Shown: positions 25,295-64,000, counted from the first letter of the stretch. The stretch: DNA of 64,000 bases from IMGVR_UViG_3300025162_000016:304759-368758; one strand, 5' to 3'. Notes: a model not told the origin generated them from the letters alone. Translations and numbers: made by a program.

Positions 25295-25567
25295 CGTCGA
25301 TCGTTCTATTTTTTTCAAGCATTCGTGGGCAATTTTGTTTATTTCGACAAATGTTTCTTTATGGGGGCTTTCTTTGCAATGAGGAAAGCTCTCTTTTAGG
25401 ATTTTTTTAAGACCTTCGATTATATCGATTTGAATAGTGGTTTGATTTTGCATTTTAAATAAATATCATATTTCCGGTGTTTTTGTTAACATATAGCTAT
25501 GTATTATAAAAGAGCAAACATTTTATTGAAAAATGTTGACATTTGTTGAAATTCTGCTATAGTAATT

Positions 25568-25731
25568 CCAGTTCTAATAAAATAAACAGTTGTGCGTTGA
25601 TGAATAGAAATATTCCAGCACGGAGCTTATAGTCCCGAGTGTTTTGAAAACCTAAATTTAGTAAGAATAAATTTTAATAGAACAGGTAACTATATGGTGA
25701 AGTGCTGGAACAGACCAGTTACTATATCACC
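25568..25731 (+). ncRNA. Putative scaffold RNA copy A (internally shortened) fused to one CRISPR repeat (25696-25731)
   Basis: TTGACA/TATAGT promoter at 25536-25563; sequence shared with the 45.6, 56.8 and 63.7 kb copies. Confidence 0.6.
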
Positions 25732-25945
25732 TACCAATAATGGGAGTAATCGTAGTGGAAATCAATCGAAGCAAAAAGTGGTGGGAAGAAATGCTTTTGA
25801 AATTCGTCAAGATATTATAGAAAACGCTATAGAAATCATGCGGATGTCCAATCCGAAATCTTCGTTGAATATAGAAGATATGACCGACGACATATTAAAA
25901 ATATCATCAAAATTATATGATTTTGTTGAAAATAAATACCGGTAA
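25694..25945 (+). CDS. Small phage protein whose N-terminus is now encoded by a CRISPR repeat
   Basis: NAFEIRQDII..IL....KLYDFVENK resembles a small T4-like phage protein family. Confidence 0.5.
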   Translation: MVKCWNRPVTISPTNNGSNRSGNQSKQKVVGRNAFEIRQDIIENAIEIMRMSNPKSSLNIEDMTDDILKISSKLYDFVENKYR

Positions 25946-25950
25946 AATAT

Positions 25951-26583
25951 ATGAATTTAAGTTTAACAAATATTATACGGGATAATCCCGATTTAACTAA
26001 AAGATTAGAAGAAGGAACAAAAGAAGTTCGAAAAAGTAAAACTAATTTAGTTCAGGCGGCAAACAATTTCAACAATAAATATACCGATGAGATAGAAGAA
26101 GGAACTCGGCGGCGGCAAATACTTTTGGAAAATGGTAAGGAGGTTGGTAAAACCGAGGAAGAAGTTCTAGGAACATGTGGCGGATTTATTCCTTCGGTTA
26201 GAACTCCTATAATGAATTTTCTGTTTTTTATGATGAGAGATGGAAATCGTTCGGATTGGGTGGGTATTCAAAAAGATCTTAATGAGCAATATGGGCATAT
26301 AGATACAAATTTAGAAGAAGTAGTTTCAGAAAAAGAATTGGATCAGATATATGGGCAATTGATACATGATGATGCGCAATATAAGAATGTAAACGAACCG
26401 GAAGAAATGGACCGATTCATTTATGGAGATATGTCACATGATTTATTTATTAAGATAAAAAAATTAAAAGCTCTATCCCGAAGTGATAATCAAAACGAAG
26501 CGTTTTTAGCATATCAAATATGCATGCGATTATGTCGAAAGTTTGGATTAGAAATAGATAAAATTCCTTGTAACATAAAATAA
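25951..26583 (+). CDS. DUF2786-like domain protein
   Basis: C-terminal KIKKLKALSRSDNQNEA..A....L..KFGL. Confidence 0.7.
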   Translation: MNLSLTNIIRDNPDLTKRLEEGTKEVRKSKTNLVQAANNFNNKYTDEIEEGTRRRQILLENGKEVGKTEEEVLGTCGGFIPSVRTPIMNFLFFMMRDGNRSDWVGIQKDLNEQYGHIDTNLEEVVSEKELDQIYGQLIHDDAQYKNVNEPEEMDRFIYGDMSHDLFIKIKKLKALSRSDNQNEAFLAYQICMRLCRKFGLEIDKIPCNIK

Positions 26584-26594
26584 GTTTTTTTATA

Positions 26595-26814
26595 ATTTTT
26601 GGATGTCTGATATGGATATGAGACTTTTATGTTAATTTGCGAGCGGTTAGGTGGTGTCAAATATGCCGTAGCCGCTCGCAACTTGTAACTCACTGATAAT
26701 GTGGAACTTACGAAATATGATATTTGATGTTGACAAATCGAGGATAATAGAATACACTACCGCTCGCAAATTGATACACAGTTCTTTGACAATACGATAG
26801 TTGCGAGAGACACA
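26595..26814 (+). promoter_or_regulatory. CRISPR leader 1
   Basis: TTGCGAGCGG..CCGCTCGCAA motifs, TTGACA/TAGAAT promoter; near-identical to leader 2. Confidence 0.85.
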
Positions 26815-27352
26815 GGTGAAGTGCTGGAACAGACCAGTTACTATATCACCGGTTGAACTCTGTCATATCTATGTCCACGTTAATCAGGTGAAGTGCTGGA
26901 ACAGACCAGTTACTATATCACCGATCTCTTCCGATGTTTGCTCAAGAGAAGCTTGTTTGGGTGAAGTGCTGGAACAGACCAGTTACTATATCACCTAGGG
27001 TTGCTATAAATGTAACAACCAAACTAGCAGATGGTGAAGTGCTGGAACAGACCAGTTACTATATCACCCAGTACTGGAGTACGGTTAAACCGGACACTAT
27101 ACCCGAGGTGAAGTGCTGGAACAGACCAGTTACTATATCACCAATAAACACTGTTCATCCGTTTCCGTTTCCGGTTTCGTTTGAAGGGTGAAGGTGAAGT
27201 GCTGGAACAGACCAGTTACTATATCACCCGAAAATGGAATATCTCTGCTATAGTTATGTTTGTAAGGTGAAGTGCTGGAACAGACCAGTTACTATAACAC
27301 CATCCTTGGACCAACCATCCAACCATCCAAACAGACCAGTTACTATATCACC
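26815..27352 (+). CRISPR. CRISPR array 1: 7 full repeats plus 1 partial
   Basis: Repeats start at 26815, 26887, 26960, 27033, 27107, 27193, 27266; spacers 36-38 nt (one 50 nt); degenerate distal end. Confidence 0.97.
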
Positions 27353-28057: not shown

Positions 28058-28090
28058 ATATATATATGCCGGTTAAAATAAAACGTCTAC

Positions 28091-28305
28091 AATTTTTGGA
28101 TGTCTGATATGAGACTTTTATGTTAATTTGCGAGCGGTTAGGTGGTGTCAAATATACCGTAGCCGCTCGCAACTTGTAACTCACTGATAATGTGGAACTT
28201 ACGAAATATGATATTTGATGTTGACAAACCGGGGATAATAGAATACACTACCGCTCGCAAATTGATACATAGTTCTTTGATAATACGTTACTTACGAGGG
28301 ATACA
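28091..28305 (+). promoter_or_regulatory. CRISPR leader 2
   Basis: Duplicate of leader 1. Confidence 0.85.
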
Positions 28306-29152
28306 GGTGAAGTGCTGGAACAGACCAGTTACTATATCACCCAATGATCCAACCGCAAACTTTATAAACTGTTGTGTTGGGTGAAGTGCTGGAACAGACC
28401 AGTTACTATATCACCAATATTACTACGTCGTATTTATATATCGAATGATAATGTTGGTGAAGTGCTGGAACAGACCAGTTACTATATCACCCAAGTCTAT
28501 CCATGCAACCTAATACATATCGTTGTGAGGTGAAGTGCTGGAACAGACCAGTTACTATATCACCGGAGAGAGATAAACCTCTACATGGTATGGTTCGGCC
28601 AGTGTGGTGAAGTGCTGGAACAGACCAGTTACTATATCACCTTCCCATATTCTTCGGAGTTACTCGAATTATCCGAGGTGAAGTGCTGGAACAGACCAGT
28701 TACTATATCACCTGTATGTGGTAACTTTTGTTCCTATAGCATCAACAAGGTGAAGTGCTGGAACAGACCAGTTACTATATCACCGTCAACAGTTGACATA
28801 CCTTGAATTCCCGGCGCTGTTGGTGAAGTGCTGGAACAGACCAGTTACTATATCACCTAATGATCCAACCGCAAACTTTATAAACTGTTGTGTTGGGTGA
28901 AGTGCTGGAACAGACCAGTTACTATATCACCAATATTACTACGTCGTATTTATATATCGAATGATAATGTTGGTGAAGTGCTGGAACAGACCAGTTACTA
29001 TATCACCTAGCATACTGGTATGATAGGATCTAAGAAGTAATCTTGGTGAAGTGCTGGAACAGACCAGTTACTATATCACCGACCATCGAGGGGATAACCG
29101 ACACGATTGACCTTACGGCGAATTACTGGAACAGACCAGTCACTATATCGCC
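28306..29152 (+). CRISPR. CRISPR array 2: 12 repeats, 11 spacers
   Basis: 36-bp repeats, 35-41-nt spacers; terminal variant GGCGAATTACTGGAACAGACCAGTCACTATATCGCC. Confidence 0.98.
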
Positions 29153-29626: not shown

Positions 29627-29629
29627 AAT

Positions 29630-32161: not shown

Positions 32162-32364
32162 AACAACTAAGGAAATTAAAACTAAACTTCCTAAAACTAA
32201 AGTAGTCAACTATACAGTTGATCCTGAACAGGGGTCTATGTTCTTGGCATACGCTGCCCCAAAAGAATACGCCGTTAAATCCATTGATCGTAAAGGAAAA
32301 AAAGCGACGGTCACATATATTATATAAGCACGTTGAATTCTGAGTTCGTGACCGCTAGAATTAC

Positions 32365-34814
32365 ATGAATAATAAATTAATTAATGATCAAATTTATTTA
32401 CAAGTTGAGGATCAAATTAGATCACAAGTGCTGTCACAAGTTGAGTTACAAGTTTGGTCACAAGTCTATTCACAAGTCTATTCACAAATTCGGTCACAAG
32501 TTAGTTCACAAGTCTGGTCACTAGTTAAGTCACAAGTTGAGTCACCGGTTTGGTCACAAGTTGAGTCACAAGTGCGTCAACACGTTAGAAATGAGCTAAG
32601 ATCAAATGAGCATTAAATTAATTATGGATCAAGTTTGGTCGCAAGTTAGGCATCAAATCGAGTCACAAATTTGGGATCAAGTCTGGTCACAAGTTCAGTT
32701 ACAAGTCTATTCACAAGTCTATTTGCAAGTTGCGTTACAAGTTCTGAATAAAGTTAGGTCACAAGTTGCGGATCAATTGCGGTCACAATTAGAATCAAAT
32801 AAATTATAAAGTAATGCGAGGGACAACATAAAAATGGATTTTCCGGATCAAGTAATATTACAAGAGATGGGTAAAATAATGGGACGAGTTGAGTCACAAA
32901 TTGCGTCACAAGTTAGGTCACAAGTTTCGTCACAAGTTGCGAACCAAATTCAGTCACAGATGATGTCACAAATTCGGAATCAAATAGATAAATAGTGATG
33001 TCTCAATTACAGTTACAAGTTCGGACTCAGGTAAGGCATCAACTTGAAAGGTTTCTAATGTATCCGATGGTGGTACAAACTGGAAGTTTAATATCTCAAG
33101 AAGTCAACAACCAAATAGAATCCCAAGTTGGGCGTAAAATATGGGAAACCGTGGAGTTGAACATAGCATATACAATGGAATTCCAAGTTAAAGAACAACT
33201 AGAATTACATGAATAATACATTAATTAATGATCAAGTCTGGTCACAAGTCTATTCACAAGTTTGGCAACAAGTTCGGAATCAAGTTAGTTCACAAGTCTA
33301 TTCACAAGTTGATTCACAAGTCTGTTCACAAGTTTGGGATCAAGCTGGGTCACAAGTGCGGTCACAAATTTGGGATCAAGTAGGGCAACAAATTAGAAAT
33401 GAGCTAAGATCAAATGAGTATTAAATTAATTAATGATCAAGTCACGTCACAAGTTCAGTCACAAATTTGGGATCGAGTTTGGGATCAAGTGATGTCCCAA
33501 GTTTCGTCACAAGTTAGCTCAGAAGTTTGGAAACAAGTCTGGTCACAAGTTGAGTCAGAAGTGGCAGAACAACTCTGGTCACAAGTCAAGGATCCAGTCT
33601 GGTCACAAGTTCGGTCACAACTAGAATTATATGAATAATAAATTAATTAATGATCAAATTTATTCACAAGTTTCGGTACAAGTTGAGGATCAAGTTTGGG
33701 CACAAGTGCTATCACCAGTTCAGTCACGAGTTTCGTCACAACTGATGTCACAAGTTGAGTCACAAGTTGTGGCACAAGTTTGGTATAAATTAATTAATGA
33801 TCAAATTTATTCACAAATTAGATCACAAGTCTATTCACAAGTTGAGTTACAAGTTGAGTTACAAGTGCGGTCACAAGTCTGGTCACAAGTTGATTCAGAA
33901 GTGCGGTCACAAGTTCGGGATCAAGTTAAGTTACAAGTTGCATCACAAGTTAGGTCACAAGTTGGGGATCAAGTTGGGGATCAAGTTGGGGATCAAGTGA
34001 TGTCCCAAGTTTCGTCACAAGTTAGCTCAGAAGTTTGGAAACAAGTCTGGTCACAAGTTGAGTCACAAGTCTGGTCACAAGTTCAATTAATTAATGATCA
34101 AATTTATTTACAAGTTGAGTCACAAGTCTGGTCACAAGTTAATTCACAAATTCGGTCACAAGTTAGTAATCAAGTTAGGTCACACGTTGCGGATCAATTG
34201 CGGTCACAACTAGAATTACATGAATAATAAATTAATTAATGATCAAATTTATTTACAAGTTGAGGATCAAATTAGATCACAAGTGCTGTCACAAGTTGAG
34301 TCACAAGTCTGGTCACAAGTTCGGCAAGTTGAAGCACAAGTTCGGAAACAAGTTGAGTCACAAGTTTATTCACAAGTCTATTCACAAGTGCTGTCACAAG
34401 TTGAGTCACAAGCCAATTCACAAGTCTGGTCACAAGTTGATTCAGAAGTGCGGGCACAAGTTCGGGATCAAGTTAAGTTACAAGTTGCATCACAAGTTAG
34501 GTCACAAGTTGGGGATCAAGCTGGGGATCAAGTTAGGCAACAAATTATAAATGAACTAAGGTCGCATGAATAATAAATTAATTAATGATCAAATTTATTT
34601 ACAAGTTGAGGATCAAATTAGATCACAAGTGCTGTCACGAGTTGAGAACCAAGTCTGGTCACAAGTTAAGGATCAAGTGGGGCAACAAGTCTGGTCACAA
34701 GTTCGGTTACAAGTTGCGTTACAAGTTAGGGATCAAGTTAGATCACAAGTCTATTCACAAATTCGGTCACAAGTTAGGTTACAAATTTTGTCACAAGTTC
34801 AATCACAATTATAA
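32365..34814 (+). repeat. Block 1 of Gln/Val/Ser-rich (QVxS)n short ORFs (~9 ORFs)
   Basis: 12-bp unit TCACAAGTNNNN; most ORFs start MNNKLINDQ/MSIKLI and end LELHE/LRSNE. Confidence 0.9.
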
Positions 34815-34862
34815 GTGTTGACTTTCTATAAATCCTCTGATAGTATTGGAGGAGTGGAATAA

Positions 34863-35867
34863 ATGAATGTTCAGGATCAAATACATAAAAATGTGTGGTG
34901 TCCGTACGCCGAGGTTTCGGAAAACGTGCCACTTATTATCACATATCATATCGCATTTATATGTGATCAAATAGATAATTCAGTAAGATTTCAAGTAGCT
35001 AACCCACTTGAACTACAAATAAATAATCAAATTAAAAAAGAAACAACAGAAAATATGAATGAAATAGCTAAAGAAATGAATACCGATACGAATGATAAAA
35101 TCCGGGATCAAATTGTAGCCAATATATTGTCTCAACTAAAATCAAAAGTGACGGATGATGAAACCGAAATCGGGAATCAAGTAAAACTCGAAGTGGCAGA
35201 AGAAATCAAATCACATATTATGGCTCAAATGACATCAGAAGACAACAAATTCGTATATCCCTACTTCGATTGCCAGTTCTGGGCATCTTGGTTCAGTTTC
35301 TATGAATTTATGAAGACTGAACTAGGTATTGAATTCCCGAATGAAAAGGAATATAATATCCTCAAAGATTGTCAGAAATATGGCATGGTATTTCCTTTGG
35401 ATGACCTTTGTGTCGTATGTCAGCCGCCGACAATTATTAAAAAGAATAATTCAGGGTTGCACTGTGAGAATGGTCCGGCACTCAGTTATAACGGAGACAA
35501 CGAGATATTTGCATTGAACGGGGTGGTAATGCCTAAAGAATATGTATTAACTCCTGCTAGAGATATTACCGCAGAGACGGTTATGAAGGAGACCAATGTA
35601 GAGATTCGCCGGGAATTACTTAGGAAGGTAGGTATTGAGCGGCTAATGAATGATTTGCCACATAAACTGTTGGAGACCCGTGGTAACTACGAATTGTATA
35701 GTATTGATCTAAGTAATGAAATTAAAGATGCACGTTATCTGAAAATGCAGAACCCATCCATCGGAGTTTTTCATTTGGAGGGACTAGCTCCTGGTATTAA
35801 TACAATTGAGGAAGCTCTTAAATGGAGGAATAATAATTTGTTTGTTGACGCCGAAATTCTAACGTAA
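34863..35867 (+). CDS. DUF6745-type protein
   Basis: W.SFYEF, LHCENGPAL.Y....FALNGV, ETNVEIRRE....GIER, L.M.NPS; own promoter at 34818-34846. Confidence 0.75.
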   Translation: MNVQDQIHKNVWCPYAEVSENVPLIITYHIAFICDQIDNSVRFQVANPLELQINNQIKKETTENMNEIAKEMNTDTNDKIRDQIVANILSQLKSKVTDDETEIGNQVKLEVAEEIKSHIMAQMTSEDNKFVYPYFDCQFWASWFSFYEFMKTELGIEFPNEKEYNILKDCQKYGMVFPLDDLCVVCQPPTIIKKNNSGLHCENGPALSYNGDNEIFALNGVVMPKEYVLTPARDITAETVMKETNVEIRRELLRKVGIERLMNDLPHKLLETRGNYELYSIDLSNEIKDARYLKMQNPSIGVFHLEGLAPGINTIEEALKWRNNNLFVDAEILT

Positions 35868-35885
35868 ACCTAATGTTAAAACCTA

Positions 35886-45449: not shown

Positions 45450-45654
45450 TATGAATACTGATTATGAACAAGGATGGGATGCTTATATGTCCGGCCTATA
45501 TAAAGAGGATTGCCCACACACAAACAACCTCTCACAAGGTGGAGATTGGTTAGATGGTTGGTGGGCGGCACAAATACAATTGAGAGATTCCAATGTAGTA
45601 GCAGAAAAACCAACACTAAAACCAATACCATGTAAGTGCGGTAAAGAATATTAA
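45439..45654 (+). CDS. Hypothetical protein, possibly truncated by the scaffold insertion
   Basis: YEQGWDAY..G....CP...W..GW motif; stop lies inside the scaffold copy. Confidence 0.55.
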   Translation: MKNNMNTDYEQGWDAYMSGLYKEDCPHTNNLSQGGDWLDGWWAAQIQLRDSNVVAEKPTLKPIPCKCGKEY

Positions 45655-45817
45655 TAAACATAGGTTAATTGACTAACAAAAAGATGAGAATAGAAATATT
45701 CCAGCACGGAGCTTATAGTCCCGAGTGTTTTAAAAACCTAAATTTAGTAAGAATAAATTTCAATAGAACAGGTAACTATATGGTGAAGTGCTGGAACAGA
45801 CCAGTTACTATATCACC
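45640..45817 (+). ncRNA. Putative scaffold RNA copy B (5'-truncated) fused to one CRISPR repeat (45782-45817)
   Basis: Near-identical to 63859-64000, followed by an exact 36-bp repeat. Confidence 0.6.
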
Positions 45818-48096: not shown

Positions 48097-48246
48097 ATGA
48101 AAACACCTATATATACAAAAATTGCACAGCGAAACTGGATGGAAAAGCGAAAGAAAGCGGGATATTGCTGGGCTACTTTCTTTACCACCAAGGAGAACGT
48201 AGCTAAATTAAAGGAGTTCTACGCTGAACTCAAAAAGTCCAAATGA
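48097..48246 (+). CDS. Small basic TnpB-associated protein (49 aa, not in track)
   Basis: MKTPIYTKIAQRNWMEKRKKAG...KLKEFYAEL; ATGA overlap with 48243. Confidence 0.65.
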   Translation: MKTPIYTKIAQRNWMEKRKKAGYCWATFFTTKENVAKLKEFYAELKKSK

Positions 48247-49493
48247 TCCGCTCATCAAACCATACAACAAAATTTGCAAATCCTCTCAAACTAAAGAGGT
48301 TGTCCAGATTCGTTGACGAATACAGGCGAGTTGGCCAAATCATTATCGATACTATCTGGGCCAACGGTTATGACAGCTTTATTCCATTAAAGGATCAACT
48401 TAATTGCCCAAAATACCTTGACTACAATCGGTTTGACGTGGAAACAGACATTTCCCCAAGAGCAATGAGTTCGCTCACAACCCAAATATGTGCTGCCCTA
48501 TCAGCATCCACAAAAAAACGAAAGAAACTTCTATATACAAAATCCAAACTAATAGATGAAAATATACCAACAAAATCTATCGATAGACTGTTGACAAAAT
48601 ACATAATCGTAAAACCAGACTGCCGTTACATGAATCCAGAACTTAGTTCCAAATGTAGCGACATCGAATCTGGAAAATCCTTCGACTACTTTCTACGAAT
48701 AAAATGTATCGGTAAATCTTATGGTCACATAAAAATTCCACTAAAACATACCAAAATGAGCCTAAAATGGCTCAAATCAGGAAAACCACTCACATCATAT
48801 TCTTTAACTACATCTTCTATTACACTGAGGTTTGAAATTAAACCTTTACGCACAACCATTGGAACAAAGGTTATTGGTGTTGATCAAGGGATGAAAGACG
48901 TTGCTACTTGTTCTGATTCCCAAACAACCCCCAAAACCGATGCTCATGGACACTCGCTTGAATTTATAATAAACAAACTGTCAAGAAAAAAGAGGGGTAG
49001 CAGAGCATTTGAAAAAACACAGTCTCACAGAAAAAATTTTATTAATTGGTCAATCAATCAATTAAATTTTAATGATGCCAAAGAAATTCGATTGGAAAAA
49101 ATATGGAACATTGGCTACAAAAATCGAACGTCAAGAAAGCTTTCACATTGGACAAACACGTTGATTAGAGATAAAATTATTGGAAAATGCGAAGAACTGG
49201 AGGTTCCAGTCATCGAGCAGGATTCCACTTATCGTTCCCAACGTTGTTTTAATTGCGGATTGGTACGAAAAGCCAATCGGAAAGGTAAATTATACAAATG
49301 TAAGAAATGTGGGTATGAGGCGGATGCTGATTTCAATGCAAGCCTAAACCATAGTATTGATTTGCCTGATATCGATTGGCGGTTTCGTGGTAAAGGACAC
49401 AATCTAGGCAAGGGGTTCCGATGGACTCCTACCGGATTGTTCAACCTTGACGGATCGGAGCTTAGAGTCCCGGTTTCCAACAAACAAGGATAA
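48243..49493 (+). CDS. tnpB: TnpB/Cas12f-like RuvC nuclease
   Basis: IGVDQG, IRLEKI, SQRCFNCG..CKKCG, DADFNASLN. Confidence 0.85.
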   Translation: MIRSSNHTTKFANPLKLKRLSRFVDEYRRVGQIIIDTIWANGYDSFIPLKDQLNCPKYLDYNRFDVETDISPRAMSSLTTQICAALSASTKKRKKLLYTKSKLIDENIPTKSIDRLLTKYIIVKPDCRYMNPELSSKCSDIESGKSFDYFLRIKCIGKSYGHIKIPLKHTKMSLKWLKSGKPLTSYSLTTSSITLRFEIKPLRTTIGTKVIGVDQGMKDVATCSDSQTTPKTDAHGHSLEFIINKLSRKKRGSRAFEKTQSHRKNFINWSINQLNFNDAKEIRLEKIWNIGYKNRTSRKLSHWTNTLIRDKIIGKCEELEVPVIEQDSTYRSQRCFNCGLVRKANRKGKLYKCKKCGYEADADFNASLNHSIDLPDIDWRFRGKGHNLGKGFRWTPTGLFNLDGSELRVPVSNKQG

Positions 49494-49770
49494 TTTTCTA
49501 TAAATTATCTAACTCTACATCATATACTATGGAAAGTTGTTACGTATGCAAACGTGCTAAATCCAACCAAGAAAATCCATATATTTGTAATACTTGTAGT
49601 AAATTAGGATATATAGAAAATAAATGTTTACCAATCGGATTTTTTGATTTTGTTTGTTGGAAACCATTCGTCAAACTCCCATTAGGCAATTGAATTAATA
49701 TGCAAAGAGAAATTAAAATTAGAGTATGAAGAATTAAAGGTTTTTTGTTTATAATTACATATTTATTTAT

Positions 49771-55969: not shown

Positions 55970-56102
55970 AATTATTAATAACGGTGACTAGTTCACCTCA
56001 TGCTTGGTAATTTAAAAAAAAAATAGCGAATTGATAAATCGCAAATGCTGGCTCTAATCCAGTCCAAGTATATTTTAATTTTTTTCTGATATAGTTAGCC
56101 CT

Positions 56103-56576: not shown

Positions 56577-56767
56577 GCTTTCTATCAGTAACGGGATGTA
56601 CAACTACTTCCCCTACAGTAAATTTACCTCCGGTTGAATTTACCGAGTGAACTATATTTATATTTTGTCATATCCCCGCCGCCTCTAGGCTGTACAGTAA
56701 CGACAGTTAATGCGTAATTGCGGGGATTTTATATTGGACCATCGTAACTCCAACTGGTACTATTAGA

Positions 56768-57030
56768 ATAGTTACCTGTTCTATTGAAATTTATTCTCGC
56801 TAAATTTAGGTTTTTAAAACACTCGGGACTATAAGCTCCGTGCTGAAAATATTTCTATTCTCATCTTTTTGTTAGCCAATTAACCTATGTTTATTAATAT
56901 TCTTCACCGGAAAAATATATTAAAACAAGCGATTTATTGACAGAATTTCACTTCGGTTGCAGTTTTAATGTTGACGCAGTGGACACCACCTACTCGTCAA
57001 CCCACAACTGTTTATTTTATTAGAACTGAA
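56768..57030 (-). ncRNA. Putative scaffold RNA copy C (full length, no CRISPR repeat)
   Basis: Reverse complement of 63740-64000; promoter at ~57034-57061. Confidence 0.6.
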
Positions 57031-57104
57031 GTTACTATAGCAGAATTTCTATAAATGTCAACATTTTTCAATAAAATGTTTGCTCTTTTCTGATACTTAT
57101 AAAC

Positions 57105-57605
57105 ATGAAAACAAAATTTATATTTCTTATAATAAGTTTCTTACTGTTGGTAGGATGTAACACCGTTCCTAGTTTTACTTCTAATAATATTCTTAATTTA
57201 AGAGTGGTAGATGCTTCTCAAAACATACTGAGAGGTGGTCAACCAGATGCGAAGGGATTTATATATTTGAAATCACTTGGTATAACTAATATTATTAAAC
57301 TTAATTTAGAAGATAATGAGGATGCGGAGGCAACTGCATTAGGAATGACGGTGGTTTATATTCCTATTAACACATATGATCAGGTAATTCATTTGGAAAA
57401 GTGGAAGTTCGAGGTTGCGGTAATTGCTATAACTCCGAACACTTTCATTCATTGTGCGCATGGACAAGATCGAACTGGGTTGGTTGTAGCGGGATATAGG
57501 ATGGCGAATGGAATGTCTAAAGCAGATGCAGAAAAAGAAATGCTGGCGAATGGATTTCACAAAGAATTGATTGGGTTATGGGGATTTTTTAAAAAAATAA
57601 ATTAA
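57105..57605 (+). CDS. Tyrosine/dual-specificity phosphatase lipoprotein
   Basis: HCAHGQDRTG P-loop; lipobox LLVGC. Confidence 0.85.
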   Translation: MKTKFIFLIISFLLLVGCNTVPSFTSNNILNLRVVDASQNILRGGQPDAKGFIYLKSLGITNIIKLNLEDNEDAEATALGMTVVYIPINTYDQVIHLEKWKFEVAVIAITPNTFIHCAHGQDRTGLVVAGYRMANGMSKADAEKEMLANGFHKELIGLWGFFKKIN

Positions 57606-57638
57606 TGATTTATCTTTTTCTGTTGATATTTAAGATAT

Positions 57639-59357
57639 ATGACAGAAAAACAATCACTCCCATCAAGCGTTTATAATTGGAAGAGACAAAAGCCAGATTC
57701 TCGTGATTATAAATTTGCAGAAATACCTTCGGTGAAACGATTAAAAGTAACAACTCCACCACCGGTTGTTAATTTACGAAAATGGTGTTCTGAAGTAGAA
57801 AATCAAAAATCTTTAGGTAGTTGTTTTACCGGCGATACTTTAATTCCTCTTTTGAATGGAAAGATAGCTACACTGAAAGAACTTACAGATGGGATGTATG
57901 GGAAAACTTTTTGGGTATATGGAAATAAAAATGGAAGAATGGTTCCTGCGTTAGCATCCGCATCTCTTACACAGTATATCGCACCCATTTATAATGTCAC
58001 ATTAGATAATGGGAGAACAATAAAATGTACTGCTGATCATCAGTTTTTGATGCGAGATGGTAATTACAAAAAAGCAATGGAATTAGTATCTGGGGATAGT
58101 TTAATGTCATTTAGAAGAAAATATAATAAATTGGGATATGAGTATGTTTTTTGCCACAGTGACCACAAATATCATCTTACACATTGGTTAGTCGGAAGTT
58201 ATATACATGATTATTCTGTTAATAAAAATGGAGTAGAAGTGATACATCATAAGGATTTTATTAAAAATAATAATACTCCGGAAAATTTGGTAGGAATGAC
58301 AATACAAGAACATTCAATATATCAAAATAAAACGGCGGAATGTAAATTAAAACGTTTTATCGCAGCGAAAAATAGATGGAAAGATATAACGCCGGAAGCT
58401 ATGAGTCGTGTTGTAGATTCCGCAGAAATACGTTTGGGGGCAGTGGGAACACGAAGTCAGATAGCAAAAACAGCAAACGAGGTATTTCTTAAATGTGGAA
58501 ATATTTCTAAAGAACAATGGGAAACGACGGACGTAACAAAACGATTTAAGTTTGAAACGGCGATGAAATATTTTGGAAACCAAGACGAGTTATTGATTGC
58601 TGCACAAAATTATAATCATAAAGTCGTATCGGTCATTAATAGTAATACATCCGAAGATGTTTATTGTCTCACGGTACCAGATACTCAAAATTTTGCACTT
58701 AATGATGGAGTTTATGTTCATAATTGTACCGGCCAGGCGTGGGTGGGTTTAATGGAGTGGCATGAGAATTTCATGGGAAGAGGAGGAAAGGCATTTCAAA
58801 ATCTTAGTCGGTTGTTTGTTTATTATAATGAACGGGAACTTGAAGGAACCATCAATGAGGATGCCGGTGCCGAATTAAGAAGTGGAGCAAAAGCATTGGC
58901 TACGTGGGGGGTTTGTTATGAAAAAAGTTGGCCTTATAACATTGATACTTTCACACAAAAACCAAGTCCAATATGTTATCAGGATGGAGCTATTCATAAA
59001 ATTAATAGTTATTATTCTATCAGTACATTTAATCATCTTAAAATGTGTTTGGCAAACAATTTGCCGGTGGTATTTGGATTTATGGTATATTCGAGTTTTG
59101 ATTCCGATGTGGTTGCTAAAACCGGTATAGCTTCTATGCCAGATATTAAAAACGAGGAATTGCTGGGGGGACACGCCGCAATGATTGTGGGATATAATAA
59201 TTATGAGAAGCGATTTTTAGTAAGAAATTCGTGGGGGAAAAATTGGGGACTTAAAGGAATTAATGCCGGTTATTTTACGCTTCCCTACGATTATGTGGCT
59301 AATCCCAATCTTGCCAGTGATTTTTGGACGGTGGTTCGTATTGTCGAAGACGCATGA
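57639..59357 (+). CDS. C1 (papain) family cysteine peptidase interrupted by an intein
   Basis: Q..LGS|C, LSRLFVYYNER, GGHA..IVGY, VRNSWG..WG..GYF. Confidence 0.9.
   Translation: MTEKQSLPSSVYNWKRQKPDSRDYKFAEIPSVKRLKVTTPPPVVNLRKWCSEVENQKSLGSCFTGDTLIPLLNGKIATLKELTDGMYGKTFWVYGNKNGRMVPALASASLTQYIAPIYNVTLDNGRTIKCTADHQFLMRDGNYKKAMELVSGDSLMSFRRKYNKLGYEYVFCHSDHKYHLTHWLVGSYIHDYSVNKNGVEVIHHKDFIKNNNTPENLVGMTIQEHSIYQNKTAECKLKRFIAAKNRWKDITPEAMSRVVDSAEIRLGAVGTRSQIAKTANEVFLKCGNISKEQWETTDVTKRFKFETAMKYFGNQDELLIAAQNYNHKVVSVINSNTSEDVYCLTVPDTQNFALNDGVYVHNCTGQAWVGLMEWHENFMGRGGKAFQNLSRLFVYYNERELEGTINEDAGAELRSGAKALATWGVCYEKSWPYNIDTFTQKPSPICYQDGAIHKINSYYSISTFNHLKMCLANNLPVVFGFMVYSSFDSDVVAKTGIASMPDIKNEELLGGHAAMIVGYNNYEKRFLVRNSWGKNWGLKGINAGYFTLPYDYVANPNLASDFWTVVRIVEDA
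57822..58724 (+). mobile_element. Intein (301 aa) with HNH homing endonuclease
   Basis: Starts CFTGDT, block B CTADH, IHHKDF.K.NN.PENL, ends VYCLTV...VHN|C. Confidence 0.9.
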
Positions 59358-59893
59358 AAATAGCGTTTTATAAAGGAACTAGTTGGTTTAGTAAAGCAAT
59401 CATGCGAATTTCCCGTGGGGGTTATTCTCATGCGGCGGTTCAATTAAACGACGGAACCATTGTTGAAGCGGGTGTAAAAAATGGGGTATGTCTGAGAAAA
59501 AGTTTATTGGACGACGTGGATATTAATACTACGGTCGATGTATTTGATGTTCAAACTACGCCGGAAGAAGATGAAATTATTTGTGATTTCTTGATTCGAC
59601 AAATGGGGAAGGGGTATGATTTCTGGAATATAATTGGGTTTGTATTATATTCATCTAAAGAAGGAAGAAAAGGATATGATCGGTGGTTTTGTAGTGAATT
59701 GGTAGTGGCGGCTTTTCGACAAGCCGGAATCAATCTACTCACACGAGTTGACGCATGGAAAATATCACCCACGATTTTATCTTATAGTCCTCTCCTAAAA
59801 AGCGGACAGAGAATGCAGATTACAAAAAGTAAACGATTCGGTGGCATAAAACACTCAAATTCAATACATACGACAACTGAAAACTTAGGATAA
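59354..59893 (+). CDS. Permuted papain-like NlpC/P60 (YiiX/YebB-like) protein
   Basis: YSHAA..EA, GKGYD, WFCSELV, ISP. Confidence 0.85.
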   Translation: MKIAFYKGTSWFSKAIMRISRGGYSHAAVQLNDGTIVEAGVKNGVCLRKSLLDDVDINTTVDVFDVQTTPEEDEIICDFLIRQMGKGYDFWNIIGFVLYSSKEGRKGYDRWFCSELVVAAFRQAGINLLTRVDAWKISPTILSYSPLLKSGQRMQITKSKRFGGIKHSNSIHTTTENLG

Positions 59894-59976
59894 TAGTTTA
59901 TTTGCGGGCACAAGGACATCATTTTAATGGTTTTTGAATAATTTGAACTATTTATAGGATGAACTATAGATAAAAT

Positions 59977-61368
59977 ATGCATATCATTACACCGTATAAT
60001 CCGTGGGCTCCTAAAAAGAAAAAAACTTGGCAGGAAGAGTTGTGGGAACAGCAAACCATTGCGGAGGCTGAAGCAAGAATGTTAGCAGAAGCTAGTAGCA
60101 GGACATTACCCAATAATTCTCCTAATACTTCAATGGCAACGGTTGGACCAATGGCAAATACTATGGCAGGCGGTGGCGGTAAACCCGTTTATGCATTTTT
60201 TAGCGCCGGTTCAGACGTGGTAAATTTCGATCGGAGTCCTGCTAGTGGAGATGGCCCAGTCACGGTCAATTTTATAAATTTAACTACAACTCCTCAGTTC
60301 GATTCATATAAATGGAGATTTAGTGATAATACTACTAGTACGGATGTAAATCCGGTTCATATATTTCAAAGCGGAAGTACTAATTCAACCATTTATATCG
60401 CATCGTTGGAAGTAAGTAATTCTGTAACCGGTGCGCCGGGTGGAAGAAGTCCAGATGTTTTTATTGTGGTAGGAGTTCCTAGTGTAACTGCCAGTTATAC
60501 GTATACAACTACATCCAAGGTAGCGCCTTTCTCGGCGTCGTTTACTAATACTTCGATTAATACAAGTCAAACAAAAACGACTTCGTATGTTTGGATAATC
60601 AAAAACGACAATAATACATACACGTCTACGGCGACCGATTTTGAGGTTAGAATTGATAGTGGAAGTGTTACCGCATCGCTCGGAATGACTGGATCGTATG
60701 GATTAACTAGTTTGACTAATTCAATGTTTAAGGCGGCAGCACCCACATTATTAGTATCCTACACCGTGGTCACTTCGTCTAAATATGCTCCCGCTAATGT
60801 AACGTTATCAAGTTCATATAGCTATACCGGAATCGGAACTCTTAGTGGACTCTGGCGTGAAGGAGAGTATCAGGAAAATGGCACGGAATATGTGGTTGGA
60901 TATCCCGGTGCAAAAGTTATTGGGCCGGAAGTTTTCAATACGAAATCGATTTCGGGCGGTGATGGAAAATTCACCTCATCATTAGCAATTACTGAGTCTA
61001 TATACGGAATTACCGCTTTCTATACTCAGAGTTTCCAGCTTAAATTGCCAACGTTGGAACTGTCATTCGTCACTCGTTCATTTGGTAACGGTGGAATAGA
61101 GAATTCTTATATGGAGCCGGTTTCAATGTCGTACACTTCGAGTATCGTTACGGAAGGTATGTATGGGGCGAATTACACATTCCTTTGGGATTTCGGTGCG
61201 GCAAGTTTCACAAACTCTCAAGGAGTTTATGCTGGGACTGCAACAACTCAAGGACCGCATTTCCGATCTGATTATGCTCCCGGTTCATACACGGCATCAC
61301 TGGAAGTTACATCGAGCATTTATGGATTGTCGGTGAGATCAACTCAAAGTTTCGTTGTCGGATCTTAA
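59977..61368 (+). CDS. PKD-domain Ser/Thr-rich protein (probable virion surface protein)
   Basis: SGDGPVTVNF...YKWRF.D...ST..NP.H.F; WDFG; YTASLEV. Confidence 0.75.
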   Translation: MHIITPYNPWAPKKKKTWQEELWEQQTIAEAEARMLAEASSRTLPNNSPNTSMATVGPMANTMAGGGGKPVYAFFSAGSDVVNFDRSPASGDGPVTVNFINLTTTPQFDSYKWRFSDNTTSTDVNPVHIFQSGSTNSTIYIASLEVSNSVTGAPGGRSPDVFIVVGVPSVTASYTYTTTSKVAPFSASFTNTSINTSQTKTTSYVWIIKNDNNTYTSTATDFEVRIDSGSVTASLGMTGSYGLTSLTNSMFKAAAPTLLVSYTVVTSSKYAPANVTLSSSYSYTGIGTLSGLWREGEYQENGTEYVVGYPGAKVIGPEVFNTKSISGGDGKFTSSLAITESIYGITAFYTQSFQLKLPTLELSFVTRSFGNGGIENSYMEPVSMSYTSSIVTEGMYGANYTFLWDFGAASFTNSQGVYAGTATTQGPHFRSDYAPGSYTASLEVTSSIYGLSVRSTQSFVVGS

Positions 61369-61499
61369 TTTAAACACTCATTATAAAATCAAAGACAAGG
61401 CGTTAGTAAAATAACGCCTTTTCTTTTTTGTAACATAATCGTAACATAGATTCATCAATTTCGTTTGCGGTTCTTCATAGTTATTTGCAAATTAAAATT

Positions 61500-62186
61500 A
61501 TGATGAAAAATCTAAAAGTATATGTTTATGTCGCCGCCCTGATCATGGTCGGTGTTTTTAATGTTAATGCTCAAACTAATGTTGTATCAACGGGTTCCAC
61601 AAATAAACCTGTACATAAAACATTTAAAACCTTTGATTTGAGTAATTTCGTCTTTACAGTTGAAAACGAGTTCCGTGCTAAAGACACGGGCACCTCCTTC
61701 TTCTATGAACATAATGATATTCAAGCTAAATATCTTTTGATAGACAAATATTTTGATATCTTCACTGATTATCGACTTATTTTTAAAAACAGTGCCGAAG
61801 GTAATAATTGGAAAAATCAAAGTATGTTTCTTGAAGGCTTTAATATAAAATATCCCGAACAAACGTGGGGTAAAATTAACCTCCGTCAACGACTTGAAAT
61901 TGGACTGAACCATGCTCCTACAAAAGACACTTATCAGTGGAATGTGTTTCCCAAATATAATACCCCATGGAAACTTACTAAATATGAAATCAATCCATTC
62001 GTAGCCGATGAATCCTTCTTTGACACCCAGCAATCTATGGGCTTTGTAAAAAATCGAGTCTATGCTGGTATAGATTATAAGTTTACTCCCAAAATCAAAG
62101 GTGGTACTTGGTACTACTATGAAACCGCTGCTCATTCATCATCAACCGCAAATGTCCTCGTTACCCAGATTAAATTCGAATTTTAA
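61500..62186 (+). CDS. Outer-membrane beta-barrel (DUF2490-like)
   Basis: Signal peptide, R.RLE, PFVADE.F, NRVYAG, terminal Phe. Confidence 0.7.
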   Translation: MMKNLKVYVYVAALIMVGVFNVNAQTNVVSTGSTNKPVHKTFKTFDLSNFVFTVENEFRAKDTGTSFFYEHNDIQAKYLLIDKYFDIFTDYRLIFKNSAEGNNWKNQSMFLEGFNIKYPEQTWGKINLRQRLEIGLNHAPTKDTYQWNVFPKYNTPWKLTKYEINPFVADESFFDTQQSMGFVKNRVYAGIDYKFTPKIKGGTWYYYETAAHSSSTANVLVTQIKFEF

Positions 62187-62192
62187 ATTAAT

Positions 62193-63068
62193 ATGAAATA
62201 TCTTTTTATAAGTGCTATTCTCAGTCTGTTAATGGTAGGTTGTAATAAATCTAATAACATCGTGACAACCCCAACCACTACCATCCAAGTAAAAGGCTCA
62301 GATACAATGGTTAATCTGGCTCAAGCATGGGCAGAAGAATATGTAAAAACAAATCCTGCCATCAATGTGGAGGTTTGTGGCGGCGGGTCTGGTGTTGGTA
62401 TTGCTGCCCTCGAAAAGGGAATCATTGATATAGCGAATAGTAGCCGTAATATGAAACCCGACGAAATTGATGCTACTAAAAAAATAACAGGTAAGTTACC
62501 AGTGGAGTTCGTAGTCGGTTATGACGCTCTTGGTGTATATGTTCATATTGATAATCCCATTAATGAAATTACCATCGAACAACTCGCCCAAATCTATGTG
62601 GCAAATGGTAAAATTAATAAATGGTCGGATATTGGTATCAAAATTCCCAATGGAGAAGATAACATTGTCCTCGTCAATAGACAATCTAGTTCGGGAACAT
62701 ATGAGTTCTTCAGAGAACATGTTCTAAACAAAAAAGACTTCCGCCTCGGTTCGAGGGATATGAATGGTTCAAAAGAAGTGGTTGAATTAGTTTCATTTAC
62801 AAAAGCCGCTATCGGCTATAGTGGTATGGGGTATAATATACCGGGAAAAGTAAAAATGTTGAAAATAGCTAAAGCTGCCGGTATCCCATCCGTCGAACCT
62901 ACAATGATAAATGCATTAAATAAATCATACCCTCTATCTCGTTCACTATTATGTTATACTCTAGGAGAACCCGCTGGTGAACTGAAAAAATATCTTGATT
63001 GGTGCGTATCTCCTCCCGGTCAAAAAATAGTAGAACAAACGGGATATGTTCCACTCCCAATTAAATGA
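62193..63068 (+). CDS. pstS: Phosphate ABC transporter substrate-binding protein
   Basis: KGSDTM, GGGSGVGI, SSR, R..SSGTYEFF, YPLSR.L; lipobox. Confidence 0.93.
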   Translation: MKYLFISAILSLLMVGCNKSNNIVTTPTTTIQVKGSDTMVNLAQAWAEEYVKTNPAINVEVCGGGSGVGIAALEKGIIDIANSSRNMKPDEIDATKKITGKLPVEFVVGYDALGVYVHIDNPINEITIEQLAQIYVANGKINKWSDIGIKIPNGEDNIVLVNRQSSSGTYEFFREHVLNKKDFRLGSRDMNGSKEVVELVSFTKAAIGYSGMGYNIPGKVKMLKIAKAAGIPSVEPTMINALNKSYPLSRSLLCYTLGEPAGELKKYLDWCVSPPGQKIVEQTGYVPLPIK

Positions 63069-63097
63069 GCGGCAATTATCATTTTGTTTCTATTTAT

Positions 63098-63308
63098 TTT
63101 GAAGGAAGCAGAAAACCCATCTGCTTCCAGCGGATGGGATGAATGCGACCCATTGAAAAATAGTTTGATGTTTCTCATTTCTCAAAAATATATATTCTTG
63201 TAGAAAGCAATCTTCGGATTAGCATTCTCAAGGGCTGGAAGAGTCCTATAGAAACTCTAATGTTAGAGACAAGTGGAAACCCACTTGCTTTAGCGGGTGG
63301 GTACTTCA
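63098..63308 (+). mobile_element. Non-coding IS200/IS605 miniature element (PATE-like)
   Basis: Left hairpin CCCATCTGC-TTCCA-GCGGATGGG; right hairpin CCCACTTGC-TTTA-GCGGGTGGG-TACTTCA; no transposase or tnpB between. Confidence 0.7.
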
Positions 63309-63313
63309 TAAAT

Positions 63314-63688
63314 ATGATTAAACTAAAAGATATTTTGTTTGAGCTTATTGATAAGAATGCGATATTATATTTAGGATGGGTTAAACGCAATAACCATGAT
63401 GTTATGGGAATGGACATTCAGTCTGGGGAGGATGAGACGCATCATAATTATATGCTCGGATTGCCTCCGGAATGGAGAAATGAATTTGATAGTAATTTAT
63501 TGAGATGGAGATATCGAAAAGATATTAATATTGTCTATTGGTGGGAGTTTGGTAATCCAACCGATGACGAGAAAGAGGCGGTAGAACACTGGATTGAAAA
63601 AAAATTAAATCAAAAAAATCCTTCTCATAAAATTATTCCTACCGATAAAAATAATATGACTTTTTGGAAATCTCATGGAGAAGATTAA
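63314..63688 (+). CDS. Hypothetical protein
   Basis: Likely start MIKLKDILFE just after the IS end. Confidence 0.65.
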   Translation: MIKLKDILFELIDKNAILYLGWVKRNNHDVMGMDIQSGEDETHHNYMLGLPPEWRNEFDSNLLRWRYRKDINIVYWWEFGNPTDDEKEAVEHWIEKKLNQKNPSHKIIPTDKNNMTFWKSHGED

Positions 63689-63739
63689 CAATGTCAAATT
63701 TTGATGTTGACATTTATAGAAATTCTGCTATAGTAATTC

Positions 63740-64000
63740 CAGTTCTAATAAAATAAACAGTTGTGGGTTGACGAGTAGGTGGTGTCCACTGCGTCAACAT
63801 TAAAACTGCAACCGAAGTGAAATTCTGTCAAAAAATCGCTTGTTTTAATATATTTTTCCGGTGAAGAATATTAATAAACATAGGTTAATTGACTAACAAA
63901 AAGATGAGAATAGAAATATTCCAGCACGGAGTTTATAGTCCCGAGTGTTTTAAAAACCTAAATTTAGCGAGAATAAATTTCAATAGAACAGGTAACTATC
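63740..64000 (+). ncRNA. Putative scaffold RNA copy D (full length; 3' flank outside window)
   Basis: TTGACA/TATAGT promoter at 63707-63734; multiple hairpins. Confidence 0.6.

What the first reader, a model, noticed from the sequence alone, without database searches (positions are those of the whole stretch)
25536..64000. Four dispersed ~260-nt structured RNA scaffolds, two fused directly to one CRISPR repeat (candidate natural single-guide system)
Seen: the same non-coding block occurs at 25568-25695 (internal deletion), 45640-45781 (5'-truncated), 56768-57030 (minus) and 63740-64000. Copies A, C and D have their own TTGACA/TGCTATAGT promoter. The block has hairpins (GTTGACG..CGTCAAC; TGTTTTAATAT..ATATTAATAAACA), and its ends are imperfectly complementary (GTTCTA..TAGAAC). 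All copies end at ...AATAGAACAGGTAACTAT. In A and B an exact array repeat follows, then unique sequence; C goes straight into unique sequence. The block contains TTCCAGCAC, the reverse complement of repeat nt GTGCTGGAA, and this is altered (TTTCAGCAC) only in the repeat-less copy C. Established: type V-F (Cas12f) tracrRNAs pair with the repeat, and TnpB omegaRNAs carry a 3' guide taken from flanking DNA. Inference: these may be tracr-repeat-guide fusions, intermediate between omegaRNA and CRISPR, spread through a phage genome. Caveat: the 9-nt anti-repeat can also pair locally with GTGTT.
Basis: partly seen in the sequence, partly recalled or inferred. Interest (0 to 1): 0.92.

Follow-up and report, generated by a model that had tools for sequence, protein, structure and literature searches.

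The report
Orphan TnpB guide-RNA genes in phage
The repeated ~260-base block is not a CRISPR tracrRNA: it is a promoter-driven copy, without a protein gene, of the guide-RNA end of a transposon nuclease (TnpB), present five times in a 362-kb lake phage, so it is a natural case of guide-RNA genes separated from their nuclease gene.

Summary
The block occurs at the stated coordinates, and a fifth full copy lies outside the window. Four copies carry a TTGACA-16-TATAGT promoter, and all five end at ...GGTAACTAT.

The last 80-95 nt of every copy are homologous to the 3' end of the omegaRNA, which is also the transposon right end, of an IS607-family TnpB clade common in large phages. A covariance model built only from 29 tnpB 3' ends finds all five copies end to end (E 4e-5 to 2e-4). 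A sequence profile (E 3e-6) and blastn (76% identity, E 7e-9) agree. All matches stop at the family's right-end boundary, where TnpB guides begin.

So these are orphan omegaRNA-type guide genes with 3' guides taken from the flank. They probably work in trans with a phage TnpB. I could not test transcription or binding.

The tracrRNA reading fails:
- The CRISPR repeat folds on itself, with covariation across relatives.
- The 9-nt "anti-repeat" lies in a conserved omegaRNA hairpin arm.
- The two repeat-fused copies stem from one event and are the degenerate ones.

The 5' ~170 nt has no detectable relatives.

The parts
25536..25563 (+). sigma-70-type promoter of copy A (TTGACA, 16 nt, TATAGT, TG-extended)
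   Evidence: 11 of 12 matches
25566..25693 (+). copy A. It keeps the 5' ~45 nt and the 3' 93 nt of the scaffold; about 165 nt of the middle are deleted between short similar stretches. The omegaRNA 3' module is at 25600-25693.
   Evidence: R1 match 43.5 bits, E 1.7e-4
25696..25731 (+). exact CRISPR repeat, 2 nt behind the end of copy A
45639..45779 (+). copy B, the 3' 142 nt only, with no promoter of its own. Its first bases overlap the stop of a small ORF. The omegaRNA 3' module is at 45681-45779.
   Evidence: R1 47.3 bits, E 4.1e-5
45782..45817 (+). exact CRISPR repeat, 2 nt behind the end of copy B. The junction is the same as in A.
56768..57061 (-). copy C, full length: promoter 57061-57034, RNA of about 260 nt ending at 56768, omegaRNA 3' module at 56857-56768. 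It points against the neighbouring genes.
   Evidence: R1 45.9 bits, E 7e-5; nhmmer E 3.4e-6
56742..56767 (-). flank of C, the putative guide. Counting the last 4 nt of the scaffold, it matches the tnpA gene of the phage's IS607 at genome 11175-11200 in antisense at 23 of 26 positions.
   Evidence: E about 1e-3 per query; status uncertain
63707..63999 (+). copy D, full length: promoter 63707-63734, omegaRNA 3' module at 63901-63999. It continues at genome 7102 into unique sequence that forms a small hairpin, followed by a gene.
   Evidence: R1 44.3 bits, E 1.3e-4
48243..49516 (+). TnpB gene (416 aa, same family, RuvC D-E-D kept) with its own omegaRNA 3' module and right end at 49432-49516 (AACTCT subtype)
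24108..25294 (+). TnpB gene of another clade (391 aa) just upstream of copy A. Its own right end, ...GGGTTGTTGAC, follows the stop directly, so copy A is not its guide RNA.
26815..27352 (+). CRISPR array: 7 repeats plus a degenerate end, 6 spacers
28306..29152 (+). CRISPR array: 12 repeats with the last one degenerate, 11 spacers

Best explanation
Each block is a guide-RNA gene of the TnpB (OMEGA) type with no protein gene attached.

Shown:
- The last 80-95 nt are a homologue of the omegaRNA 3' module of an IS607-family TnpB clade. The module consists of a covarying hairpin around GGAGCTTATAGTCC, an A-rich linker, a second hairpin, and the terminal AACTAT.
- The block ends exactly at that family's transposon right-end boundary.

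Inferred:
- A strong sigma-70 promoter transcribes about 260 nt of scaffold and reads on into the flank. The first 16-20 flank bases then serve as the guide.
- The RNA is loaded in trans by a TnpB encoded elsewhere in the phage. The best candidate is the 404-aa protein at genome 76732-77946. It is part of a complete IS607 with a serine-recombinase tnpA, has an intact RuvC triad, and is the only gene in the genome with an AACTAT-type right end.
- The complex would cut or bind DNA that matches the flank next to a TAM. Under the usual TnpB logic this favours retention and spread of the insertion among co-infecting genomes.

The CRISPR repeat behind A and B is a secondary juxtaposition from one event, not a tracr:repeat partnership. 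The 5' ~170 nt are of unknown origin and appear dispensable or exchangeable.
For: - Model R1 was built from 29 tnpB 3' ends with no scaffold copy in it. Its hairpin has 7 of 8 pairs with compensatory changes.
- R1 matches all five copies over model positions 1-92, at 43-47 bits and E 4e-5 to 2e-4. Every match ends on the last scaffold base.
- Genome-wide, R1 finds only the 4 gene-attached modules and the 5 orphans at E <= 1.
- Five other phage genomes, 1.25 Mb in total, give only their gene-attached module.
- An nhmmer profile of 27 tnpB 3' regions hits the copies at profile positions 221-296 only, E 3e-6 to 2e-5, again ending at the right end.
- blastn matches the last 75 nt to the tnpB 3' end of a related phage (L037) at 76% identity, E 7e-9. 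Both ends of the match coincide with the boundary.
- The right-end boundary ...ACTAT is confirmed by two paralogous elements in one phage, whose similarity stops there.
- The promoters score 11 of 12 with TG.
- C and E point against their neighbours, so they are not mRNA leaders.
- C, D and E are 97-98% identical. Their few differences lie in loops or keep wobble pairs.
- The 3' module is the only part kept in all copies. A lacks the middle, B lacks the 5' half, and a population variant has 136 nt of the middle replaced.
- The TnpBs of this family keep the D, E, D residues.
- Protein-less IS derivatives whose omegaRNAs must be used in trans are described in the literature (preprint 10.1101/2023.03.14.532601).
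Against: - There is no transcript evidence: no RNA run was listed.
- There is no binding or cleavage data, and the TAM is unknown.
- No terminator follows the putative guides.
- The 5' ~178 nt show no similarity to tnpB genes. It is therefore unproven that the whole RNA is a competent omegaRNA.
- The module is closer to the omegaRNA of a TnpB in another phage (L037) than to that of the candidate partner. The two proteins are only 58% identical.
- No left end and no common 5' boundary were found, so the way the copies spread is unexplained.
- Only one flank has a match elsewhere. It is imperfect (23 of 26), with mismatches where a seed would lie.
- Relatives carrying this TnpB family show no orphan copies.
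Confidence: 0.55

Rival explanations
1. Inert relics. The blocks are decayed right ends of former IS607/TnpB elements (solo right ends) that were copied by recombination. The promoter merely drives downstream genes (A, D) or makes pointless antisense RNA (C, E). No TnpB uses them.
For: - Only the last 80-95 nt are homologous to the family.
- A and B are visibly degenerate.
- There is no left end and the 5' boundaries are inconsistent.
- The cognate TnpB, which would be L037-like, is not in the genome.
- No convincing targets were found.
- Right ends of serine-recombinase elements could themselves be recombination sites with a sharp crossover point.
Against: - Three full copies are 97-98% identical, including an 11-of-12 promoter.
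- The hairpin of the 3' module is intact in all five copies, and their substitutions preserve pairing.
- The 3' module is the one part always kept.
- Variants occur in other lake samples.
Confidence: 0.25
2. The block is a tracrRNA whose anti-repeat pairs with the CRISPR repeat, and A and B are natural single guides (tracr-repeat-guide) for a Cas12f-like nuclease or the phage Cas12.
For: - A 9-nt stretch is complementary to the repeat. By my arithmetic, about 0.03 such matches are expected by chance.
- A and B are followed by an exact repeat.
- Systems in which an omegaRNA split into tracrRNA and crRNA are discussed in the literature (the details rest on my own knowledge).
Against: - The repeat self-folds into a 12-13-bp hairpin. 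Of its 12 pairs, 9 show changes on both sides across relatives, and 0 of 500 shuffles reach this.
- The scaffold:repeat duplex energy is reached by 34 of 500 shuffles.
- The 9-mer overlaps the 5' arm of conserved hairpin 1.
- D and E keep the 9-mer without having a repeat.
- A and B come from one event and are degenerate.
- The repeat family co-occurs with Cas12 (1003 aa) and Cas3 in four relatives at 45-58% identity, with no scaffold found in their short contigs.
Confidence: 0.05
3. In A and B, the TnpB guide is the CRISPR repeat itself. The RNA would direct a TnpB to CRISPR repeats, either for insertion or homing next to arrays or to attack arrays of rival phages that carry the same system.
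For: - The right end lies 2 nt from a repeat in A and B.
- In relative L026, an IS607 of the same AACTAT type sits directly behind the only repeat after the CRISPR leader.
- Three of the four arrays lie 0.4-1.5 kb from a tnpB gene.
Against: - There was one fusion event only.
- A and B are degenerate, and B has no promoter.
- The phage's own 56 repeats would be at risk unless the TAM is absent there.
- A third suspected junction, at genome 12980, is not significant: 453 of 1000 shuffles reach its score.
- Other phages with this TnpB family have no such repeat nearby.
Confidence: 0.08
4. Antisense regulators. The 3' extensions act by RNA-RNA pairing, C against the IS607 transposase mRNA and E against the 3' end of a methyltransferase mRNA, without any nuclease.
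For: - The C flank is antisense to tnpA codons near the TPTGTI motif at 23 of 26 positions.
- E overlaps the end of a convergent FkbM-type methyltransferase gene.
Against: - D and A are not antisense to anything.
- The tnpA match is in trans, short and imperfect.
- An exact 19-mer match in an unrelated phage gene shows how easily this coding motif recurs.
- This reading does not explain conservation of the omegaRNA module.
Confidence: 0.07

Closest known systems
TnpB omegaRNA (reRNA) of IS200/IS605-IS607 elements
   Same: The 3' module is homologous in sequence, and in a covarying hairpin, to omegaRNA ends of an IS607-type TnpB clade. The block ends at the transposon right end, and variable flank follows where the guide lies.
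   Different: No tnpB reading frame overlaps it. It has its own promoter. The 5' two thirds are unrelated to tnpB genes. There are five copies at unrelated loci.
PATE-like protein-less IS200/IS605 derivatives that encode omegaRNAs used in trans (Meers et al., preprint 10.1101/2023.03.14.532601)
   Same: These are multi-copy elements with no protein gene. They carry a guide-RNA scaffold that must rely on a TnpB encoded elsewhere.
   Different: Those elements keep both transposon ends and are moved by a Y1 transposase. Here only the right end is recognisable, the parent family is IS607 (serine recombinase), the host is a jumbo phage, and a dedicated sigma-70 promoter is part of the copied unit.
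TldR guide RNAs (domesticated TnpB-like repressors; preprint 10.1101/2023.11.30.569447)
   Same: An omegaRNA-derived scaffold with a fixed natural guide that is no longer tied to transposition.
   Different: TldR guides sit beside their nuclease-dead protein gene. Here the RNAs are separated from any tnpB, and the family's nucleases keep D, E, D.
Type V-F (Cas12f) tracrRNA / single guide, and transposon-CRISPR intermediates
   Same: A long structured RNA upstream of a repeat and a 3' guide in copies A and B, with evolutionary kinship to TnpB.
   Different: There is no real anti-repeat. The repeat is self-folding and belongs to a Cas12-Cas3 system. The fusion is a single, degenerate event.
Solitary CRISPR repeat units in phages (RNA anti-CRISPRs, mini-arrays; PMC11656645)
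   Same: Single repeats are scattered through a phage genome, including those behind A and B.
   Different: The repeats match the phage's own arrays and Cas12, not a known host system, and most sit at the 5' end of transcription units.

Membership tests
TnpB omegaRNA / OMEGA guide RNA | Sequence and structure homology to the omegaRNA of a TnpB clade | tested here: met
   For the last 80-95 nt only. R1 gives 43-47 bits, E 4e-5 to 2e-4. nhmmer gives E 3e-6. blastn gives E 7e-9. The 5' part shows no homology.
TnpB omegaRNA / OMEGA guide RNA | The 3' end of the scaffold coincides with the transposon right end and is followed by variable guide sequence | tested here: met
   All matches end on the last common base ...AACTAT. 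The boundary is verified by paralogous elements L050/L060. The five flanks differ.
TnpB omegaRNA / OMEGA guide RNA | Encoded within or overlapping the 3' end of a tnpB gene | tested here: not met
   There is no open frame. The C-terminal profile finds nothing in the copies. blastx gives only E 0.09, driven by the hairpin region.
TnpB omegaRNA / OMEGA guide RNA | Transcribed, bound by TnpB, and directs TAM-dependent DNA cleavage | not testable with these tools
   No RNA run was listed, and no biochemistry is available.
PATE-like non-autonomous IS element | No protein-coding gene, several copies | tested here: met
   Five copies, all without an ORF.
PATE-like non-autonomous IS element | Both transposon ends (left and right) present with constant boundaries | tested here: not met
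   The 3' boundary is constant. The 5' boundaries differ among A, C/E and D, and there is no similarity to regions upstream of tnpA or tnpB.
tracrRNA of a type V system | An anti-repeat that pairs extensively with the CRISPR repeat | tested here: not met
   Only 9 nt pair. The duplex energy of -22.5 kcal/mol is reached by 34 of 500 shuffles. The 9-mer lies in the arm of hairpin 1.
tracrRNA of a type V system | The repeat depends on the tracrRNA rather than on its own fold; anti-repeat and repeat covary | tested here: not met
   The repeat's own hairpin covaries in 9 of 12 pairs, with 0 of 500 shuffles as high. No scaffold homologue is available beside the related arrays.
tracrRNA of a type V system | Encoded next to the effector gene and array | tested here: inconclusive
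   A lies 1.1 kb upstream of an array and 0.2 kb behind an unrelated-clade tnpB. C, D, E and B do not. The cas12-cas3 locus is 26 kb from the nearest copy.
Known RNA families (Rfam 15) | Match at or near a family's gathering score | tested here: not met
   No match at gathering score. Only chance-level snoRNA hits appear at E 2.8-8.8.

The most novel reading that the evidence does not exclude
The phage keeps a small library of trans-acting omegaRNA genes, each with its own promoter and its own fixed guide. They retarget one TnpB to several sites, and one lineage (A/B) is programmed with, or processed at, the CRISPR repeat of the phage's Cas12-Cas3 system. That would be a living example of guide genes uncoupled from the nuclease gene, and of cross-talk between a transposon nuclease and a CRISPR system. 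This is a stage often postulated on the path from TnpB to type V CRISPR.
Probability: 0.15. Interest if true: 0.85.

Novelty: new variant of a known kind. Interest (0 to 1): 0.55.

Why it matters
TnpB guide RNAs are normally embedded in the nuclease gene and tied to one insertion site. Here the guide module has been separated from the gene, given a strong promoter, and multiplied inside a virus that also carries 15 tnpB genes and a Cas12-Cas3 CRISPR system.

If the RNAs are used in trans, this would show how a single-guide transposon nuclease can acquire several independent guides. That is a step that models of CRISPR origin require. It would also offer a compact natural promoter-scaffold-guide cassette to test for genome editing.

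If they are inert, the case still serves as a warning: a 9-nt "anti-repeat" next to a repeat can be a by-product of transposon ends landing beside CRISPR repeats.

Tried and rejected
- Rfam, at gathering and at permissive thresholds, gave nothing.
- Exact-pattern scans of IMG/VR and JGI metagenomes, using 3' and 5' motifs of the block and the repeat core, returned only fragments of the same phage or chance hits in coding DNA.
- blastn of the block against isolate phages found no match.
- No RNA run was listed.
- The Cas12 protein scan of IMG/VR found only itself.
- Protein remnant test: the colinear blastx alignment to a TnpB C-terminus (E 0.09) was not confirmed by a family profile run on six-frame windows. 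I therefore reject the claim that the whole block is a pseudogenised tnpB 3' end, for lack of proof.
- The 5' 178 nt compared with the upstream parts of 25 homologues scored no better than shuffles.
- A suspected third right-end/repeat junction behind the tnpB at genome 12890 is not significant.
- Guide searches: within the genome, only the C flank gives a hit. The exact 19-mer hit in IMG/VR lies in an unrelated structural gene and is chance. The E flank hits only the phage itself.
- Array spacers have no match in isolate phages.
- Empty-site reconstruction at copy E, through homologues of the methyltransferase, was inconclusive. The tail supplied by the element has the same length as native tails.
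- The 5'-UTR leader reading is rejected because C and E face away from any gene.


Full report
**Setting.**
- The window is the last 64 kb of a 368,758-bp virus contig from lake water. Its first and last 7,102 bases are identical, so the unique length is 361,656 bp and the window's end continues at genome position 7103.
- The genome holds four CRISPR arrays with 36 spacers and a 36-nt repeat, and about 19 solitary repeats.
- It also holds a Cas3 gene divergent from a 1003-aa Cas12, which is only distantly like Cas12j19/Cas12X.
- There is no Cas1.
- There are 15 TnpB-like genes.

**The observation.**
- A has the promoter, about 45 nt of the 5' end and the last 93 nt. B has only the last 142 nt. 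C (minus strand) and D are full length.
- All end at ...GGTAACTAT.
- A and B continue with AT and an exact repeat. C continues with unique sequence.
- Using the terminal overlap, D also runs into unique sequence.
- A fifth full copy, E (genome 237371-237040, minus strand), does the same.
- Promoters in A, C and D match 11 of 12 positions with a TG-extended -10.
- Read depth over the block is 5-6 times that of the flanks in three DNA runs. Every loose end seen there is explained by the five copies.
- The RNA folds somewhat better than shuffles (z = -2.4).

**What it is.**
- A blastx comparison gave the first lead. The block resembles the C-terminal coding end of one of the phage's TnpB genes, and that gene is followed by the same terminal GTAACTAT.
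- This TnpB subfamily has four genes in the phage, all with the RuvC D-E-D residues. It has 37 relatives in IMG/VR, mostly on large phage contigs, and only two in prokaryote genomes.
- Their 3' ends share four features: a hairpin around GGAGCTTATAGTCC, an A-rich linker, a second hairpin, and a terminal [ACT]ACTNT.
- In the first hairpin, 7 of 8 pairs show compensatory changes.
- A covariance model (R1) built from 29 such ends, with no scaffold copy included, finds all five copies over its whole length. Scores are 43-47 bits, E 4e-5 to 2e-4, and each match stops on the last common base.
- In the whole genome, R1 finds the four gene-attached modules, the five orphans, and nothing else at E <= 1.
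- In five other phage genomes, R1 finds only the gene-attached module.
- A sequence-only profile of 27 tnpB 3' regions hits the copies at its last 76 positions, E 3e-6 to 2e-5.
- blastn aligns the last 75 nt with the tnpB 3' end of another phage at 76% identity, E 7e-9.
- Two paralogous elements in one phage are similar exactly up to ...GACTAT, so this motif is the true right end.
- The sharp 3' boundary of the block is therefore the right-end boundary of an IS607-type element. By established knowledge of TnpB, that is where the guide begins.

**Limits of the homology.**
- The first ~178 nt, which include both conspicuous hairpins, resemble nothing.
- A family protein profile run on six-frame windows finds no trace of a coding remnant.
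- Pairwise scores against 25 homologues equal those of shuffles.
- The DNA profile does not extend upstream.
- This part is also the variable one. It is deleted in A, cut off in B, and 136 nt of it are replaced in a variant present in three DNA runs, one of which barely contains the phage itself.
- The 3' module is the only constant part.

**Why it is not a tracrRNA.**
- The repeat family travels with the Cas12-Cas3 pair. Four relatives at 45-58% protein identity have the same gene pair and a homologous repeat.
- Across 14 repeat variants, the repeat's own two-helix hairpin is kept by changes on both sides in 9 of 12 pairs (0 of 500 shuffles reach this; slid controls collapse).
- A self-folding repeat is the hallmark of effectors that need no tracrRNA (established knowledge).
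- The best scaffold:repeat duplex is matched by 34 of 500 shuffled scaffolds. In cis, the repeat of copy B folds on itself.
- TTCCAGCAC overlaps the 5' arm of omegaRNA hairpin 1. That arm varies freely in homologues from phages with no such repeat nearby.
- D and E keep the 9-mer without having a repeat.
- A and B share the AT junction and private substitutions, so the fusion arose once. Both copies are degenerate.
- The tnpB just upstream of A belongs to another clade and ends with its own ...GGGTTGTTGAC.
- The nuclease at 48243 has its own right end of the AACTCT subtype.

**How it most likely works.**
- Shown: homology, the boundary, promoter quality, copy number, and orientation.
- Inferred: transcription from the promoter through the module into the flank, loading by a TnpB in trans, and guide-directed action on DNA.
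- The best partner candidate is the 404-aa TnpB at genome 76732-77946. It lies in an IS607 with a resolvase-type tnpA, keeps its catalytic residues, and is the only gene with an AACTAT-type end.
- However, the module is nearer to the omegaRNA of a 58%-identical TnpB from another phage.
- C and E face against their neighbours, so they cannot be mRNA leaders. D and A could also drive downstream genes.
- The C flank matches the tnpA of the phage's other IS607 in antisense at 23 of 26 positions. This is suggestive at E about 1e-3. The mismatches lie where a seed would be, and the same coding motif recurs by chance elsewhere.
- Protein-less IS derivatives whose omegaRNAs must be used in trans are already described. 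The kind is therefore known, but this variant is not. It has an IS607 parent, a right end only, its own promoter, a foreign 5' part, a jumbo-phage host, and one lineage abutting a CRISPR repeat.

**The repeat junction.**
- In relative L026, an IS607 of the same subtype sits directly behind the single repeat that follows the CRISPR leader.
- Three of the phage's four arrays lie within 1.5 kb of a tnpB.
- These transposons thus seem to land near repeats, which can explain the A/B junction without any functional coupling.
- The alternative, that the repeat is read as a TnpB guide, is not excluded.

**Verdict.**
- The block is real and non-random.
- It is identified with high confidence (about 0.9) as an omegaRNA/right-end module. 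I place moderate confidence (about 0.45-0.55) on it acting as a trans guide-RNA gene.
- The CRISPR single-guide reading is not supported.

Noticed in passing
genome 298524-303928 (L009 4525-9929), just upstream of the window: A Cas3 (type I-C-like) gene is divergent from a 1003-aa Cas12 with intact RuvC motifs. The pair and a homologous covarying repeat are conserved in four metagenomic relatives. The genome has no Cas1. This resembles the Cas12-Cas3 hybrid mentioned in PMC10910872.
   Followed up: partly
window 2325-10047, 25696, 45782; genome 12987, 229885, 279857, 282075, 282812, 304154, 304355: About 19 solitary CRISPR repeats are present. Most lie 0-10 nt behind a -10 box and in front of a gene, so they would form the 5' end of many transcripts. 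Nine in window 2325-10047 are AGTG...CACT variants whose end bases covary. Relatives have such repeats just behind cas12 or at its start (L029 9107-9142; L028 5029-5064).
   Followed up: partly
window 32256-45100: About 13 kb hold roughly 50 tandem small genes (80-118 aa). Each encodes MNDIIK..., then a run of four-residue x-S-Q-V repeats (12-nt period), then ...SQLE[LS]HE. Stops and starts overlap (ATGAATGA).
   Followed up: partly
whole genome; window 18519-19664, 24108-25283, 48243-49493: There are fifteen TnpB-like genes from several clades in one phage. Two have serine-recombinase tnpA genes (IS607), and five end with ...GGGTTGTTGAC directly after the stop. Three of the four CRISPR arrays lie 0.4-1.5 kb from a tnpB.
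   Followed up: partly
L026 3336-5140 (relative of the phage's Cas12-Cas3 locus): An IS607 of the AACTAT subtype is inserted directly behind the single repeat after the CRISPR leader. Its tnpB is split by an HNH-like ORF, but the omegaRNA end is intact (R1 62.5 bits).
   Followed up: partly
window 20136-20529 and 56001-56071: A phage-encoded tmRNA (93.8 bits) and a tRNA.
   Followed up: no
window 57639-59357: A papain-like cysteine protease gene is interrupted by an intein that carries an HNH endonuclease.
   Followed up: no
window 226-15541: Many copies of a 25-30-nt palindrome (core CTCTAACCTTAGAG) lie between small genes. They are probably terminators or operators of a cassette-like early region.
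   Followed up: no
window 56899-64000 = genome 1-7102: The contig has an exact 7,102-nt terminal overlap whose start lies inside scaffold copy C. The assembly was probably broken at this repeat, and the overlap may reflect a circular or permuted genome rather than true terminal repeats.
   Followed up: partly
window 21647-23941 and 49771-51870: Two paralogous genes (86% identity over 300 nt at their starts) carry 90-nt tandem repeats.
   Followed up: no
L011 946-1563 (genome 236445-237062): Copy E supplies, in antisense, the last seven codons and the stop of an FkbM-type methyltransferase gene. The resulting tail has the same length as in homologues.
   Followed up: partly
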